DNA of 64,000 bases from Haliotis cracherodii (Eukaryota): contig NW_027266286.1 of NCBI RefSeq assembly GCF_022045235.1, positions 74,710,001 to 74,774,000 on the forward strand, in the 5' to 3' direction. Below, piece after piece: positions 19,632-30,682 of the stretch. Each line of letters starts with the position of its first letter. Positions within the stretch are counted from its first letter, which is position 1. Made by a program: the position numbers and the translations under genes. The notes under the pieces are model-generated. The model searched no databases. It was not told the DNA's origin and was given only the letters and a program-made list of their open reading frames with translations.

Positions 19632-19995
19632 AATGCTACATCATAGAACACACTGATGACAAGAAACGTTACAGTGCTACATCATATAACACACCGATGA
19701 CAAGAAACGTTACAGTACTACATCATATAACACACCTATGACAAGAAACGTTACAGTGCTACATCATAGAACACACTGATGACAAGGAACGTTACAGTGC
19801 TACATCATAGAACACACTGATGACAAGAAACGTTACAGTGCTACATCATAGAACACACTGATGACAAGGAACGTTACAGTGCTACATCATAGAACACACT
19901 GATGACAAGAAACGTTTCAGTGCTACATCATAGAACACACTGATGACAAGAAACGTTACAGTGCTACATCATAGAACACACTGATGACAAGAAAC
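19632..19995. repeat. 41-bp tandem repeat (~9 copies) overlapping the PKS stop codon and 3' UTR
   Basis: Unit GTGCTACATCATAGAACACACTGATGACAAGAAACGTTACA. Confidence 0.95.
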
Positions 19996-22900
19996 ACTTA
20001 TTGGAACCCCTCTCTTCCAAGGTCATGTACCTTTGTTGTCTAAGACGCCCTACAGTAGATCCGGGGTTGTTCAAAGCATCAGTCACAAGACCCAGGAATG
20101 CCTCCACAAGGACACCTGCTCTGGAGGTTGTGAACAGGTCCCTCCTCAGGTGAAACTTGATCTCCATGAGCCTCGTCTCCTTCCTCTGCCAGATGTACAT
20201 GAATGTTTCAGTGGAAGAATCAAAGATAACCGGCATGTCTACTGTCAGCTGGTTGGATGCACTGGTGATGATATCAGTCTCATATATGAAGTAGTTCGTA
20301 CCAAGATTTTTGACCTCGGGAACAAGCTTCTTGATTTCTTCCGATGGATATATTGCATACTTTGTGAAGTGTTGTATAGCCTTGCTGTTGCTCTGTAGGA
20401 ACTCCTGCACAGTGGTAGTTTCCTCTGGCACTTGACAGATTAGAGGAATGAAGTTCGTGCATCTCCCCAACGATCTGGTCAGAGCAGGAACCAGGCCACG
20501 AAGGTCAACCGAGGTTGTGATGGTTGATGTTGTTTTGCTGCTGACAAAGGCAAGAAAGAGCTGGTAGATACTGGCAAGATAGTCAAAGGGTGTGAGACCC
20601 ATATCTCTCGCATACTTCAATATTTTAGTGTACAGGACATTGTTGATTGTTCTTGTGATGAAGATGTGGTCAATTTGCACATTGTGTTTTGTGGGACCTT
20701 TCGAAAGGCTGTTGTATGATATGTACATTGTCTTTGTTTTCCAAAACTGGCTTACTCTCTTGAAGTTTGGAGCAAGAATTTTCTGTATTTCCTTTGCTAT
20801 ATCCTTGTCTGTGTCAGTTACAACATCTACCAGGGGCTTACCCTGTTGTACTGCATTGGCCATGTTTTCAAGTTCTTTTACCAAGATTGTAATTGCTTTT
20901 AAATCAAATGCAAGTCTGTGGAAAACCATTCTGAGCTGTAAAGATCTTCCAAGGAATATGAATCGTAATGGACTCTGGTGTTGAAGATGCATTGGCTCTT
21001 CTGTATGCTTCTTGACCTCAGACATGTCATCTCCAGATAAAATACGGAAGTCGAACGCATTCTCCAAAGTCAACGTGTTTGTGGAGACATTTTCATGGCT
21101 GAAGATGTAAGTTGTTCTAGTGATTGGATGACGTGACACACACTCTTTCGCCACAGCAATCAATGTCGATACGTTTACCACATCCGGTACTGAAATGGTG
21201 CTGACAATTACAAAACCCATGTTGTGTTCACAGTCTGCCCTAAATCCACAGACTGACCTCGCGATTGACATGCTTATTGCCTGCTTACTGATTACAGTCT
21301 CCATGTCACTTGCCTGTGCCTGTTCCTTCTCTGTACCTGACAGGATGTCCAGTATTCTTTTGGCAATGTTGCATGTTGATTGAAGCTGTATTTCGTGAGT
21401 GGACAGCTTTACTCCAATGTCTGACAAGATTCCACCTGTAATTTCCATGGCATACATCGAGTCCACACCTTGATCCTTCATATTGGCGTCCATCTGAAAA
21501 CTGTTTACATCCAACAAAGCCTTATCACACACAAGATGTTTTACATATTCCCGGAGCATCTGCAGCCCTTCTTCCGCTGAGCAGGTACGTAGTTTGTCAA
21601 CATCGCAAGATCGTTTGCCGTCTTCTGATGTTGCCTGTTCATTTAGGATCTTCATGGCAGGTTCCAAATATGTCTTTAATCGCATCATCAAGGTTGTTTC
21701 TTTATCCCTTTGTAATTGTTCTGCCATTTTCTGTCTGTCTATTCTGCACACCAAGGCTTGGGGCTCGTTCAGCATCAGCATGTGTGTAAGACACTGACTG
21801 ACATCCTTCTTATTAATGACCATGTACCCTTGACTCTCCAACTTCTTCAATACAGATCCCTTTTTCTCCAGCATCCCAAGATCGAGAGGTCCCCAATTGA
21901 TACTCTGGCCACTCATTCCTCGCTGTCTTCTGTACACTGCCAATCCATCCAGGAATCCATTACCAGCTCCGTAGTTTGATTGACCAGCATTCCCCAGAAC
22001 AGCTGCCCCAGAAGAATGCAGGACAAAGAAGTCAAGAGGAAGATCTGCGGTCAGGATATGAAGATTCCAAGCACCAGTTACCTTTGGAGACATGGCTGTG
22101 ACAAGTTTTTCCTCTGTCATTTCAGCAAGGGAAGCATCCTGTAAAACAGCTGCCCCGTAGAATATGCCCTTGAGAGGTTTCAGATGTTTCCTTATCTTTA
22201 GTATAGCTGTTTCTATATCCTTGTAGACTGTGACATCAGTTTGAATAGATGTTATGTGACAGTTATGTTGCTGAGATAGATGGTCCATATCCACTTGTGT
22301 TTCAGGATTAGGCTTACGTCTACTCAGAATGATCACGCTTCCAGCGCCTCCTGCTGCAAGGGATGTCACACATTCCCATCCTAGTCCTGTCAGTCCCCCA
22401 ACAACCACATAAGAACCTGTGTCCTGGAACAGGTGGGTACTTGGTGTCATCATGGTTTCCATGTCAAAGTTGCTGTCTGAAGACAAGGACAACTCGGTGC
22501 TATTAAGAACTTCTGAGATGTTTAGTGGGATGACTGTTCCCTGTAGTTTTGAAACCCGGAAGTCATTGAAGCTGTCGCATATTTTGAAGACAGTTTCACT
22601 GTGGGATTTGATCCATTTAATCATTCTGGGTACTGTCTCAAGCATTACCCTCTGAGAAAATATTTCAAATGGTCGTATGACCTGAAGTTGAACGTCTTGC
22701 ACTGCCCCAAACAGGTTCTGGAGGACAGACTTTTTTGTGATTGGTTCAAAGCAAATGATTTTCCGTACATTTGTAAACATTTTCCAAAGTCTTTTGGCTT
22801 CTACTTCTGTCAGTAAAACTGTAGGAATCAATGTCACAAAATCGTCTCTTTGTAGTACAGTTTCATCTGGTTTGACTAATGACACATGTTTTGCCCCTTG

Positions 22901-30332: not shown

Positions 30333-30485
30333 CTAGAAAAACAAAGTTTAATTGTTTAAAACAATAAAACAATAAAACAAAGGAGGACGTGACGACAACC
30401 CCGAGTTACGTTCATGTTCAATGTTTGTATCGTATGGGTTGGTAGAAGGAATGTTGAGACGAAACACACCCGACTACAGACTTAC

Positions 30486-30682
30486 TTTTGTATGAACCCC
30501 GCCTTTTTGGAGTAGAACTTGCCATTGGCGTTTACATCCGGGTCATAGAAAGTGTCCCTGTTCCATCTGTCGGGCGGTATTTCTATCACATGGTTTTCTC
30601 CCTTGACCAAGACATCCCAGAATTCCCCCAGACAGGAAGCCCCCGGAAATCGACATCCCACGCCAATGATGGCGATATCCAT
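30486..30682 (-). CDS. PKS first coding exon (MDIAIIGVGCRFPGA...EIPPDRW...KAGFIQ)
   Basis: KS N-terminal motif IAIIGxGCRFPG, AA|GTAAG donor, and an acceptor 21 nt upstream of the ATG. The six exons total 7512 nt (2503 aa) with consistent phases. Confidence 0.92.

What the first reader, a model, noticed from the sequence alone, without database searches (positions are those of the whole stretch)
19964..30682. Intact animal iterative PKS ending in an NRPS-type condensation domain (KS-AT-DH-psiKR-psiER-KR-ACP-C)
Seen: six phase-consistent GT-AG exons give ~2503 aa with the complete KS triad (DTACSSS, EAHGTGT, IGHLE), AT Ser (GQSVG), DH His/Asp, KR Tyr and ACP Ser (GVDS). No thioesterase follows. 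Instead there are ~420 aa with condensation-domain signatures (RHPITRT, FHRLAFD, TPFDYLASIYQLFL, LGRCTNFIPL). There is no room for an A-T module before the convergent GTF2E1 gene. Established: animal FAS and the parrot pigment synthase MuPKS release product with a TE, and PKSs ending in a lone C domain are best known from fungi (LovB). Inference: this is a host-encoded biosynthetic enzyme that offloads its chain onto an amine or alcohol acceptor, or docks a partner through C. I know of no characterised animal enzyme of this type, but I cannot search the literature.
Basis: partly seen in the sequence, partly recalled or inferred. Interest (0 to 1): 0.92.

Follow-up and report, generated by a model that had tools for sequence, protein, structure and literature searches.

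The report
Abalone polyketide synthase ending in C domain
This is an intact black-abalone gene for a large polyketide-making enzyme that ends in a peptide-synthetase-type "condensation" domain; that design has already been reported in molluscs, but here the domain lacks its usual catalytic histidine and the protein carries a probable lipid-anchor signal, so how it works and what it makes remain open.

Summary
On the minus strand, six GT-AG, phase-consistent exons (30682-19964) encode 2503 aa: KS-AT-DH-ψKR-ψER-KR-ACP-C. The stop lies 1.8 kb from the convergent GTF2E1 gene. Pfam Condensation scores 60.9 bits, and an AlphaFold model (pLDDT 85) matches NRPS C domains.

The animal is Haliotis cracherodii. 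RefSeq already annotates this gene (XP_071114987.1), and Lin et al. 2024 (PMC10764717) already reported mollusc PKSs with C-terminal C domains. It is therefore a new member of a known but uncharacterised kind.

What this work adds:
- The C domain belongs to a mollusc-specific clade that never has HHxxxDG. Here it reads HRLAFDL, the same His-to-Arg change as in fungal LovB-like CON domains and glycopeptide X-domains. The sister clade has no His at all.
- The domain is nevertheless under purifying selection (pN/pS about 0.15).
- The protein ends in a polybasic CaaX box (CSMM). Such ends are conserved in two snail clades, which suggests farnesylation.
- Both RefSeq models cut an in-frame piece out of the dead ER. 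Transcript-type contigs show no such splice.

Simple amide or ester offloading by C is therefore weakened. A LovB-CON-like non-canonical role is more likely.

The parts
30486..30682 (-). Exon 1: start codon (MDIAIIGVGCRFPG...) and the start of the KS
   Evidence: PF00109 positions 3-66, 59.4 bits. Donor GTAAGT at 30485. RefSeq XP_071114987.1 uses the same start.
30172..30332 (-). Exon 2: KS
   Evidence: PF00109 positions 69-120. Acceptor AG at 30334-30333 and donor GTGAGT at 30171.
29607..29810 (-). Exon 3: KS with the active-site Cys (DTACSSS)
   Evidence: PF00109 positions 135-189. Splice sites read.
28319..28500 (-). Exon 4: KS
   Evidence: PF00109 positions 192-250, 75.9 bits. Splice sites read.
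26758..26932 (-). Exon 5: KS C-terminal half up to EAHG
   Evidence: PF02801 positions 6-51. Splice sites read.
19964..26556 (-). Exon 6 (6593 nt): rest of the KS (TGT..., NIGHLE), linker, AT, DH, ψKR, ψER, KR, ACP, C, CaaX and the stop codon
   Evidence: Open frame. Pfam domains. Transcript-type contigs are colinear and gap-free over 19952-25399 with no joints.
25037..25921 (-). Acyltransferase domain with GQSVGE
   Evidence: PF00698, 172.9 bits. GQS[V/I]GE is the motif in 67 of 73 family members.
24035..24763 (-). Dehydratase domain (His in HKIKDIVVVP; Asp in LDGMLQ)
   Evidence: PF21089 and PF14765. Motifs are visible in the translation.
23471..23983 (-). ψKR (structural half of the ketoreductase)
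   Evidence: AlphaFold model residues 1-171 form alternating β/α elements. The model matches DH-ER-KR modifying regions 5bp4 and 9d2y.
22574..23470 (-). ψER: an enoyl-reductase/MDR fold with a glycine-free nucleotide-binding loop
   Evidence: Foldseek matches to JamJ ER 5dov, ADH 4jbh and MAS-like ER. The loop VVILYSSSSKTFANAM has no Gly in any of 33 relatives. No Pfam hit.
21884..22417 (-). Catalytic ketoreductase (GGLTGLG; Tyr in SNYGAGN)
   Evidence: PF08659, 190.2 bits.
21377..21547 (-). Acyl carrier protein with GVDS
   Evidence: PF00550, 18.1 bits, E = 0.0032. GxDS[M/I] is conserved in the family.
20045..21202 (-). Condensation-fold (C) domain
   Evidence: PF00668, 60.9 bits. AlphaFold pLDDT 84.8, pTM 0.85. 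Foldseek: LgrA C domain E = 8e-24, TM 0.75-0.77.
20903..20923 (-). Core motif FHRLAFD, standing where HHxxxDG stands in canonical C domains
   Evidence: Alignment to LgrA places H-R opposite H-H. Family tables.
19967..19978 (-). C-terminal CaaX box CSMM after a Lys/Arg-containing tail; the stop codon is at 19966-19964
   Evidence: No substitution is listed in these codons in the relative's contigs. The tail has pLDDT below 50, so it is flexible.

Best explanation
Identity (close to certain): this is the black-abalone (Haliotis cracherodii) gene for an iterative, partly reducing type I polyketide synthase of the mollusc PKS clade. Its architecture is KS-AT-DH-ψKR-ψER-KR-ACP-C.

Shown: the gene is intact, it evolves under purifying selection, and it is colinear with 3-7.6-kb contigs in transcriptome-sized runs of a sister species.

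Inferred chemistry: KS, AT and ACP extend a chain iteratively. KR and DH reduce and dehydrate it. With a dead ER and no methyltransferase, the chain should stay unsaturated and unmethylated unless a separate reductase acts in trans.

Inferred role of the C domain: it is a real, selected condensation-fold domain, but it belongs to a mollusc-specific subfamily that has given up the canonical HHxxxDG catalytic histidine (HRLAFDL here). I therefore think it most likely works like the HR-type domains LovB/MokA CON and the glycopeptide X-domain. That means it takes the ACP-bound chain or a partner protein and controls processing or hand-over, rather than performing standard amide-bond formation.

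Inferred localisation: the polybasic tail ending in CSMM is most likely farnesylated, so the synthase would work at a membrane surface. That would suit a lipophilic product.
For: Architecture and intactness.

Species and annotation: 100% match to XP_071114987.1.

Clade membership:
- 40-54% identity to many mollusc PKSs with or without PF00668.
- All introns lie in the KS part, as Lin et al. 2024 describe for mollusc PKS genes (PMC10764717).

C fold.

Loss of the catalytic His:
- The LgrA alignment puts HR opposite HH.
- All five paralogues in this genome have HR.
- In a 136-domain tree, a 99%-supported branch separates 86 mollusc-type PKS-attached C domains, none with HH, from HHxxxDG NRPS domains.
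- In the same tree, the sister group of the Haliotis clade reads NS···D.

Selection: pN/pS is 0.15 over ACP and C against the relative's contigs. ω of the C domain equals that of the KR part in paralogue pairs (0.25 vs 0.22; 0.54 vs 0.55).

Precedent: LovB-like C domains carry HRxxxDG. They are essential, work in trans, do not need the Arg but do need the Asp, and do not release product (PMC13492342; PMC6260248). The Asp is invariant here too.

CaaX:
- Cys at position -4 occurs in 10 of 73 family members, against 1 of 214 controls and 0-3 at neighbouring tail positions.
- It is conserved across species in Haliotis and in heterobranch snails.
- It always follows K/R-rich sequence.

No onward splicing: no joints in 19400-25399.
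Against: - No product, activity, localisation or lipid modification has been measured. The mechanism rests on analogy.
- The resemblance to LovB is probably convergent. MokA CON ranks only 47th in the fold search (TM 0.72, below the canonical C domains at 0.75-0.77). No fungal CON appeared among the listed sequence hits, although most hit taxa are unknown. The Gly after the Asp is absent, and there is no MT domain.
- Some canonical C domains tolerate loss of the second His (my own knowledge, not tested here), so catalysis of acyl transfer is not excluded.
- CaaX is absent from three of the five paralogues in this genome and from most of the family.
- The runs are only guessed to be RNA, and the contigs come from a sister species.
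Confidence: 0.5

Rival explanations
1. One reading: the terminal C domain is the release catalyst. It transfers the finished ACP-bound polyketide to a free amine or alcohol (amino acid, polyamine, lipid head group or sterol), giving an N-acyl amide or an ester. Truncated fungal PKS-NRPS enzymes work this way.
For: - C follows the ACP directly, and there is no TE, R or other release domain in cis.
- The domain is full length, confidently folded and under purifying selection.
- A precedent for PKS-C forming N-acyl amides exists in fungi (Hai & Tang 2018, as cited in PMC13492342).
- One His is kept in most family members, next to the invariant Asp.
- A membrane anchor would place the enzyme next to lipid acceptors.
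Against: - The His that positions the acceptor nucleophile is Arg here and varies freely across the clade. The closest sister group has no His at either motif position.
- The canonical Gly after the Asp is never present.
- Closely related mollusc PKSs, and fish OlPKS, lack both C and TE and still must release product (PMC10764717; PMC4604110). So absence of a TE does not by itself point to C as the release catalyst.
- HR-type C domains that have been studied do not release product (PMC6260248, PMC13492342).
Confidence: 0.3
2. The C domain is an evolutionary remnant of a former PKS-NRPS hybrid. It has no present function and is kept only as a folded appendage.
For: The catalytic motif is degenerate and there is no A-T module. 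C-less relatives exist in the same genomes.
Against: - Over ACP and C, pN/pS is about 0.15. The ω of C equals that of the catalytic KR part in paralogue pairs.
- The frame is open in all five paralogues.
- The domain is retained in gastropods, bivalves and a chiton.
- Structural residues (D137, W191, D270, R272, N287) are conserved.
Confidence: 0.07
3. The locus is not an animal gene in function: it is a recent bacterial or fungal insertion, a contaminant, or a silent pseudogene.
For: Outside molluscs, the best matches of the AT region are bacterial (Sorangium and relatives, about 31-33% identity). Expression in H. cracherodii itself was not shown.
Against: - Five GT-AG introns.
- The locus is embedded between GTF2E1 and LINE elements on a 76.8-Mb contig.
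- Orthologues are present in H. rufescens (98%) and H. asinina (79%), with paralogues throughout Mollusca.
- Long colinear contigs occur in transcriptome-sized runs from four studies.
Confidence: 0.03

Closest known systems
Mollusc PKS clade with C-terminal condensation domain (Lin et al. 2024, Nat Commun, PMC10764717)
   Same: Same phylum. Same architecture class (PKS ending in an NRPS-type C domain, no TE). Same gene structure, with few introns all at the N-terminus. 40-54% identity to many such proteins.
   Different: That paper reports the architecture only. It gives no product and no analysis of the C-domain motif, the dead ER or the C-terminal tail. Haliotis appears in one of its supplementary genus tables, whose column meaning I did not resolve.
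LovB/MokA-type fungal highly reducing iterative PKS with CON domain (PMC6260248, PMC7870829, PMC13492342)
   Same: An iterative PKS with an inactive ER and a terminal C-fold domain. In both, the second His of HHxxxDG is Arg and the Asp is conserved. Both lack a TE in cis.
   Different: - No methyltransferase domain here.
- The Gly after the Asp is Leu here.
- No specific sequence or fold affinity to CON: MokA CON ranks 47th, TM 0.72.
- Different kingdom, so the likeness is probably convergent.
- No trans-ER or thioesterase partner has been identified.
- LovB has no CaaX tail, as far as I know.
X-domain of glycopeptide NRPSs (PDB 4TX2)
   Same: A C-fold domain with the same HR replacement. It acts as a docking platform instead of forming bonds. 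It matches the model at TM 0.74.
   Different: It sits in the last module of a bacterial NRPS and recruits P450s. No P450 or other partner is known here.
Truncated fungal PKS-NRPS (PKS-C) that makes long-chain N-acyl amides (Hai & Tang 2018, cited in PMC13492342)
   Same: A PKS ending in a lone C domain that uses a free acceptor.
   Different: The canonical C domains that catalyse amide formation carry HHxxxDG, which this protein and its whole clade lack. I did not check the motif of the Hai & Tang enzyme itself.
Vertebrate and echinoderm animal PKSs (medaka OlPKS, sea-urchin Pks1 and Pks2, budgerigar MuPKS)
   Same: Animal-encoded iterative type I PKSs with a KS-AT-DH-KR-ACP core. OlPKS also has six exons and no TE (PMC4604110).
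   Different: None of these has a C domain. An amphioxus PKS does have a C domain, but of the canonical HH type, and it falls outside the mollusc clade.

Membership tests
Iterative type I PKS, mollusc PKS clade (Lin et al. 2024) | Complete KS-AT-ACP core with active-site Cys/His/His, Ser and Ser | tested here: met
   Pfam domains. DTACSSS, EAHGTGT, NIGHLE, GQSVGE and GVDS are visible.
Iterative type I PKS, mollusc PKS clade (Lin et al. 2024) | Few introns, concentrated at the N-terminus (AFPK and FAS genes are intron-dense) | tested here: met
   Five introns, all inside the KS, followed by one 6.6-kb exon. Criterion from PMC10764717, section 8.
Iterative type I PKS, mollusc PKS clade (Lin et al. 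2024) | Closest relatives are mollusc PKSs; no TE | tested here: met
   40-54% identity to Haliotis, Gigantopelta, Aplysia, Pomacea, Mytilus, Argopecten and other PKSs, against about 30% to bacteria and fish. No thioesterase family among the Pfam hits.
Iterative type I PKS, mollusc PKS clade (Lin et al. 2024) | KS scores higher with the PKS HMM than with the FAS HMM (the authors' criterion) | not tested
   The authors' HMMs are not available here, and the joined KS was deliberately not assembled.
NRPS condensation-domain superfamily (PF00668) | Profile match above the curated threshold | tested here: met
   60.9 bits against a cut-off of 30.6, model positions 31-443 of 456.
NRPS condensation-domain superfamily (PF00668) | C-domain fold (two-lobed, chloramphenicol-acetyltransferase-like) | tested here: met
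   AlphaFold pLDDT 84.8. Foldseek to LgrA, TomBC, SrfA-C and TycC C domains: E = 1e-20 to 1e-24, TM 0.72-0.77 over about 430 columns.
NRPS condensation-domain superfamily (PF00668) | HHxxxDG catalytic motif with the second His | tested here: not met
   The motif is H-R-L-A-F-D-L. No HH occurs anywhere in the 86-member mollusc clade.
NRPS condensation-domain superfamily (PF00668) | Downstream acceptor module (A-T) in cis | tested here: not met
   The stop codon falls 25 residues after the end of the Pfam match. The convergent GTF2E1 ends 1.8 kb away. There are no splice joints.
LovB-like iterative PKS with CON domain | Terminal C domain with HRxxxDG | tested here: inconclusive
   HRxxxD is present but the Gly is Leu. 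Relatives in the same clade carry K, P, A, S or N-S instead of R.
LovB-like iterative PKS with CON domain | Inactive ER in cis | tested here: met
   ER/MDR fold without the Gly-rich loop.
LovB-like iterative PKS with CON domain | C-methyltransferase domain between DH and ψKR | tested here: not met
   No MT family in Pfam. The 521-aa interdomain model is fully accounted for by ψKR plus the ER fold.
LovB-like iterative PKS with CON domain | Common descent with fungal CON domains | tested here: inconclusive
   No solved fungal CON was found by sequence. MokA CON is only rank 47 by fold. No named fungal CON appeared in the 150 listed hits, but most hit taxa are unknown.
LovB-like iterative PKS with CON domain | Trans-acting ER and thioesterase partners; decalin product | not testable with these tools
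   No candidate was seen in the 64-kb window.
CaaX-prenylated proteins | Cys at -4 followed by a-a-X, with X = M, S, Q, A (farnesyl) or L (geranylgeranyl), at the true C-terminus | tested here: met
   C-S-M-M then the stop. The RefSeq model ends the same way. Contigs read through the stop.
CaaX-prenylated proteins | Conservation of the box in orthologues; polybasic stretch upstream | tested here: met
   CSLM in H. asinina. CSLL and CSLQ in the paralogue group. CTIL and CAVQ in four heterobranch genera. 10 of 73 family members against 1 of 214 controls. K/R-rich upstream sequence.
CaaX-prenylated proteins | Actual attachment of an isoprenoid | not testable with these tools
   This needs biochemistry.
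Animal FAS-like PKS (AFPK) | FAS-like KS, intron-dense gene, ψMT domain | tested here: not met
   The gene is intron-poor and no ψMT fold was seen. The closest relatives are PKS-clade proteins.

The most novel reading that the evidence does not exclude
A subset of mollusc PKSs, including this one, are farnesylated, membrane-tethered megasynthases. Their His-less C domain has been repurposed, in parallel with fungal LovB CON, either to shape the polyene chain or to hand it directly to a membrane-resident partner or lipid. I found no report of a lipid-anchored PKS in the paper library. It would tie an animal polyketide to a membrane process such as shell or pigment deposition.
Probability: 0.25. 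Interest if true: 0.75.

Novelty: new member of a known kind. Interest (0 to 1): 0.45.

Why it matters
No animal PKS that ends in a condensation domain has a known product or mechanism, yet the family is large: at least five genes in this abalone and members across gastropods, bivalves and chitons.

This work shows that the whole mollusc clade lacks the canonical catalytic histidine while staying under selection. That changes the experiment to do first. The question becomes what the C domain does to chain processing or partner binding, as for LovB CON, and not only which amine or alcohol it acylates.

The conserved polybasic-CaaX tail is a cheap, testable clue to where the enzyme works.

The finding also corrects two RefSeq models that cut an in-frame piece out of the dead ER.

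Because other animal PKSs act in pigment formation and in calcium-carbonate nucleation (PMC4604110), an abalone enzyme of this kind is a reasonable candidate for shell or tissue chemistry. Nothing here shows that.

Tried and rejected
1. The closest proteins are from Haliotis, and the window is 100% identical to an H. cracherodii RefSeq protein.

2. The intronless FkbM-like gene at 41071-42192 belongs to a family of at least 28 copies, and none lies near the other four PKS-C paralogues.

3. Hidden A, T or TE exons downstream: none. ORFs between the stop and GTF2E1 are at most 116 aa. Inside the GTF2E1 introns the long ORFs run through satellite arrays, and the longest minus-strand ORFs are a LINE reverse transcriptase and endonuclease. 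No splice joints were seen.

4. The RefSeq internal introns (23362-22484 in H. cracherodii; about 23474-22600 in H. rufescens): treated as unsupported.
 - They differ between the two species.
 - Each removes part of a folded ψER.
 - The frame is open across them.
 - H. asinina's model keeps the region.
 - Contigs from three runs cross them unspliced.
 A minor spliced isoform cannot be excluded, because contigs drop rare variants.

5. Sequence search of the 521-aa interdomain region against Pfam and PDB: nothing. Only the structure prediction resolved it.

I used the paralogues and the substitution list instead. That list may be incomplete.

7. Poly(A) signal: no AATAAA or ATTAAA in the 570 nt after the stop. 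The 3' end is not defined.

8. The full spliced protein was never joined, searched or folded.

9. The N runs at about 46.9-47.7 kb were left alone.

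
Full report
OBSERVATION

The minus strand holds a 2168-aa open frame at 19964-26470. Mapping the Haliotis orthologues onto the window and reading the junctions gives six exons:
- E1 30682-30486
- E2 30332-30172
- E3 29810-29607
- E4 28500-28319
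- E5 26932-26758
- E6 26556-19964

Every intron begins with GT and ends with AG.

Each was scanned by reference. Exons 1-5 tile the KS profiles colinearly: PF00109 positions 3-66, 69-120, 135-189 and 192-250, then PF02801 positions 6-51. Exon 6 gives the KS C-terminal end, the KS-AT linker, AT (172.9 bits), DH, KR (190.2 bits), ACP and Condensation PF00668 (60.9 bits against a cut-off of 30.6). GQSVGE in the AT looked odd, but GQS[V/I]GE is the form in 67 of 73 family members, so it is a clade trait.

The 521 residues between DH and KR match nothing in Pfam or in PDB sequences. An AlphaFold model built on 33 relatives (pLDDT 80.9) matches the DH-ER-KR modifying regions of MAS-like PKSs, and its last 320 or so residues match stand-alone enoyl reductases. 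The loop where a live ER binds NADPH has no glycine here or in any relative.

Downstream, TFIIE-alpha (GTF2E1) runs on the plus strand from 3281 to 18170. That leaves 1.8 kb, with no ORF over 116 aa.

WHAT ORGANISM, AND IS THE GENE KNOWN

The C-terminal region finds H. rufescens (98%) and H. asinina (79%) proteins. The 90% cluster of the former also holds XP_071114987.1 of H. cracherodii. That protein maps to the window at 100% identity, with the same start, the same small exons and the same end. The window is therefore black abalone, and the gene is already annotated under a generic name.

Lin et al. [quoted passage not shown] Hojo et al. 2015 listed an acorn-worm PKS as KS-AT-DH-KR-ACP-C-AMP (PMC4604110). 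RefSeq names several relatives 'hybrid PKS-NRPS synthetase pytA-like' or 'fusarin C synthetase-like'.

I found no paper that gives a product or a mechanism for any of them. This genome has at least five such genes.

THE C DOMAIN

An AlphaFold model (17 sequences, pLDDT 84.8, pTM 0.85) matches NRPS C domains. LgrA is the best hit (E = 8e-24, TM 0.75-0.77). The X-domain 4TX2 scores TM 0.74 and MokA CON 6AD3 scores TM 0.72.

The alignment to LgrA puts H-R-L-A-F-D-L opposite H-H-I-L-L-D-G. An exhaustive search with the 449 C-terminal residues found 208 proteins. Those that also carry the PKS part almost never have HH. The NRPS hits all have HHxxxDG.

A tree of 136 domains separates the two sets by a branch with 99% support. 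The amphioxus PKS-C, which keeps HH, falls on the NRPS side. Inside the mollusc clade the motif reads HR, HK, HP, HA, HS, HG, HV, NH, SH or QH. In the sister group of the Haliotis clade (Gigantopelta and relatives) it reads NS, with no histidine at all. The Asp is kept throughout, and the Gly after it never occurs.

The domain is not decaying:
- Of 40 substitutions listed between the window and the sister species' contigs over ACP and C, 26 are synonymous and 14 are not, giving pN/pS of 0.15.
- In the two informative paralogue pairs, ω of the C domain equals that of the KR part.

The literature gives a close functional parallel. LovB-like fungal PKSs end in a C domain with HRxxxDG. That domain is essential and can act in trans. 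Its Arg is dispensable and its Asp is required. In LovB it is not responsible for release (PMC13492342, PMC6260248). The X-domain has the same replacement and serves as a docking platform. LovB also has a dead ER.

The likeness is probably convergent. There is no special sequence or fold affinity to CON, no MT domain and no Gly after the Asp.

THE TAIL

The protein ends in CSMM. The H. asinina orthologue ends in CSLM. The 34%-identical paralogue group ends in CSLL or CSLQ.

A separate clade of heterobranch snails ends in CTIL (Aplysia) or CAVQ (Biomphalaria, Physella, Bradybaena).

Cys stands at -4 in 10 of 73 family members, against 1 of 214 control proteins and 0-3 at neighbouring positions. 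It always follows a Lys/Arg-rich stretch. The tail is disordered in the model.

This is the classic polybasic-CaaX layout, so farnesylation and membrane tethering are likely for this subset. The other three paralogues here lack the box. I found no report of a prenylated PKS.

EXPRESSION AND 3' END

No run is on record as RNA. The holders are transcriptome-sized contig sets (73-123 Mb against a 1.18-Gb genome) of a species about 2% divergent.

One 7575-nt contig lies gap-free on 19952-25399, and others cover the same span in three further studies. No joint occurs anywhere in 19400-25399. Long contigs stop 0-12 nt past the stop codon, and two short ones in X1 reach about 46 nt past it.

The 7575-nt length fits the predicted mRNA (7512 nt of CDS plus about 60). 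A genomic contig breaking in the intron-4 repeats would give the same length, so this is suggestive only.

The RefSeq models of H. cracherodii and H. rufescens each remove a different in-frame piece of the ψER. The contigs do not support either removal.

MECHANISM AND VERDICT

Shown:
- The gene is intact, selected and six-exon.
- The domain order and the state of the active sites are as described above.
- The ER is dead.
- The terminal domain has a C fold but lacks the canonical second His.
- The CaaX tail is conserved.
- The gene belongs to a mollusc-wide family.

Inferred:
- The enzyme makes an unmethylated, unsaturated chain.
- C acts non-canonically, in processing or hand-over, as HR-type domains do (about 0.5).
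- The alternative is that C acts as an acceptor-dependent release catalyst (about 0.3).
- The enzyme works at a membrane.

This is a new member of a published but uncharacterised kind. It is interesting mainly for the family-wide loss of the catalytic His and for the lipid-anchor signal.

LIMITS

- Read laying allowed one call, so introns 1-5 were not checked against reads.
- The joined protein was not built.
- The N runs were left untouched.

Noticed in passing
window 3281-18170 (+): GTF2E1 (TFIIE alpha) is convergent with the PKS. The first coding exon has TFIIE_alpha and a zinc ribbon. The last exon (17955-18170) has the TFIIE-A C-terminal domain. Its introns are filled with satellite arrays.
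   Followed up: partly
window 10272-13679 (-): A non-LTR retrotransposon with an open 916-aa reverse-transcriptase ORF and a 192-aa endonuclease/exonuclease/phosphatase ORF. It is inserted into the satellite array inside a GTF2E1 intron. Further LINE pieces lie at 42451-46252 (-), 51729-52688 (+) and 57564-58202 (-).
   Followed up: partly
window 8900-10200 and 13700-17380: A long tandem array whose ORF starts recur every 65 nt. It is split in two by the LINE insertion. Other arrays lie at about 6450-8370 (unit near 51 nt), 31770-32560 (near 60 nt) and 49450-50150 (near 54 nt).
   Followed up: no
window 41071-42192 (-): An intronless gene for an FkbM-type methyltransferase (PF05050, 24.3 bits) with a hydrophobic stretch near its N-terminus. 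It lies about 10 kb upstream of the PKS on the same strand. It is one of at least 28 copies in the genome, several in tandem clusters, and none lies beside the other PKS-C genes.
   Followed up: yes
window 22484-23362 and about 22600-23474 (-): The RefSeq models for this gene in H. cracherodii (XP_071114987.1) and H. rufescens (XP_046341421.2) each splice out a different in-frame piece of the dead ER. The H. rufescens model also leaves the frame near 20051 and so loses the CaaX end. Contigs cross both places unspliced.
   Followed up: yes
G000 C23:14.02 Mb, C23:14.40 Mb, C23:17.05 Mb, C3:4.25 Mb (loci L002-L005): Four further PKS-C paralogues, all with the HR·AFD motif. Three are on the same chromosome as the window. 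L005 shows an open frame of only 770 aa, so it may contain an intron or be broken.
   Followed up: partly
P0004, P0234, P0254 (relatives, not in the window): Some family members have 40-150 extra residues after the C-domain match and end in strongly hydrophobic stretches that look like tail anchors. This may be a second way of reaching a membrane.
   Followed up: no
window 27020-28040 (PKS intron 4) and 30700-31200 (upstream of the start): Intron 4 holds repeated segments about 280-365 nt apart. The region just upstream of the start codon is a GT/CA-rich microsatellite-like stretch.
   Followed up: no
window about 46950-47150 and 47530-47700: Runs of N (assembly gaps or masked).
   Followed up: no
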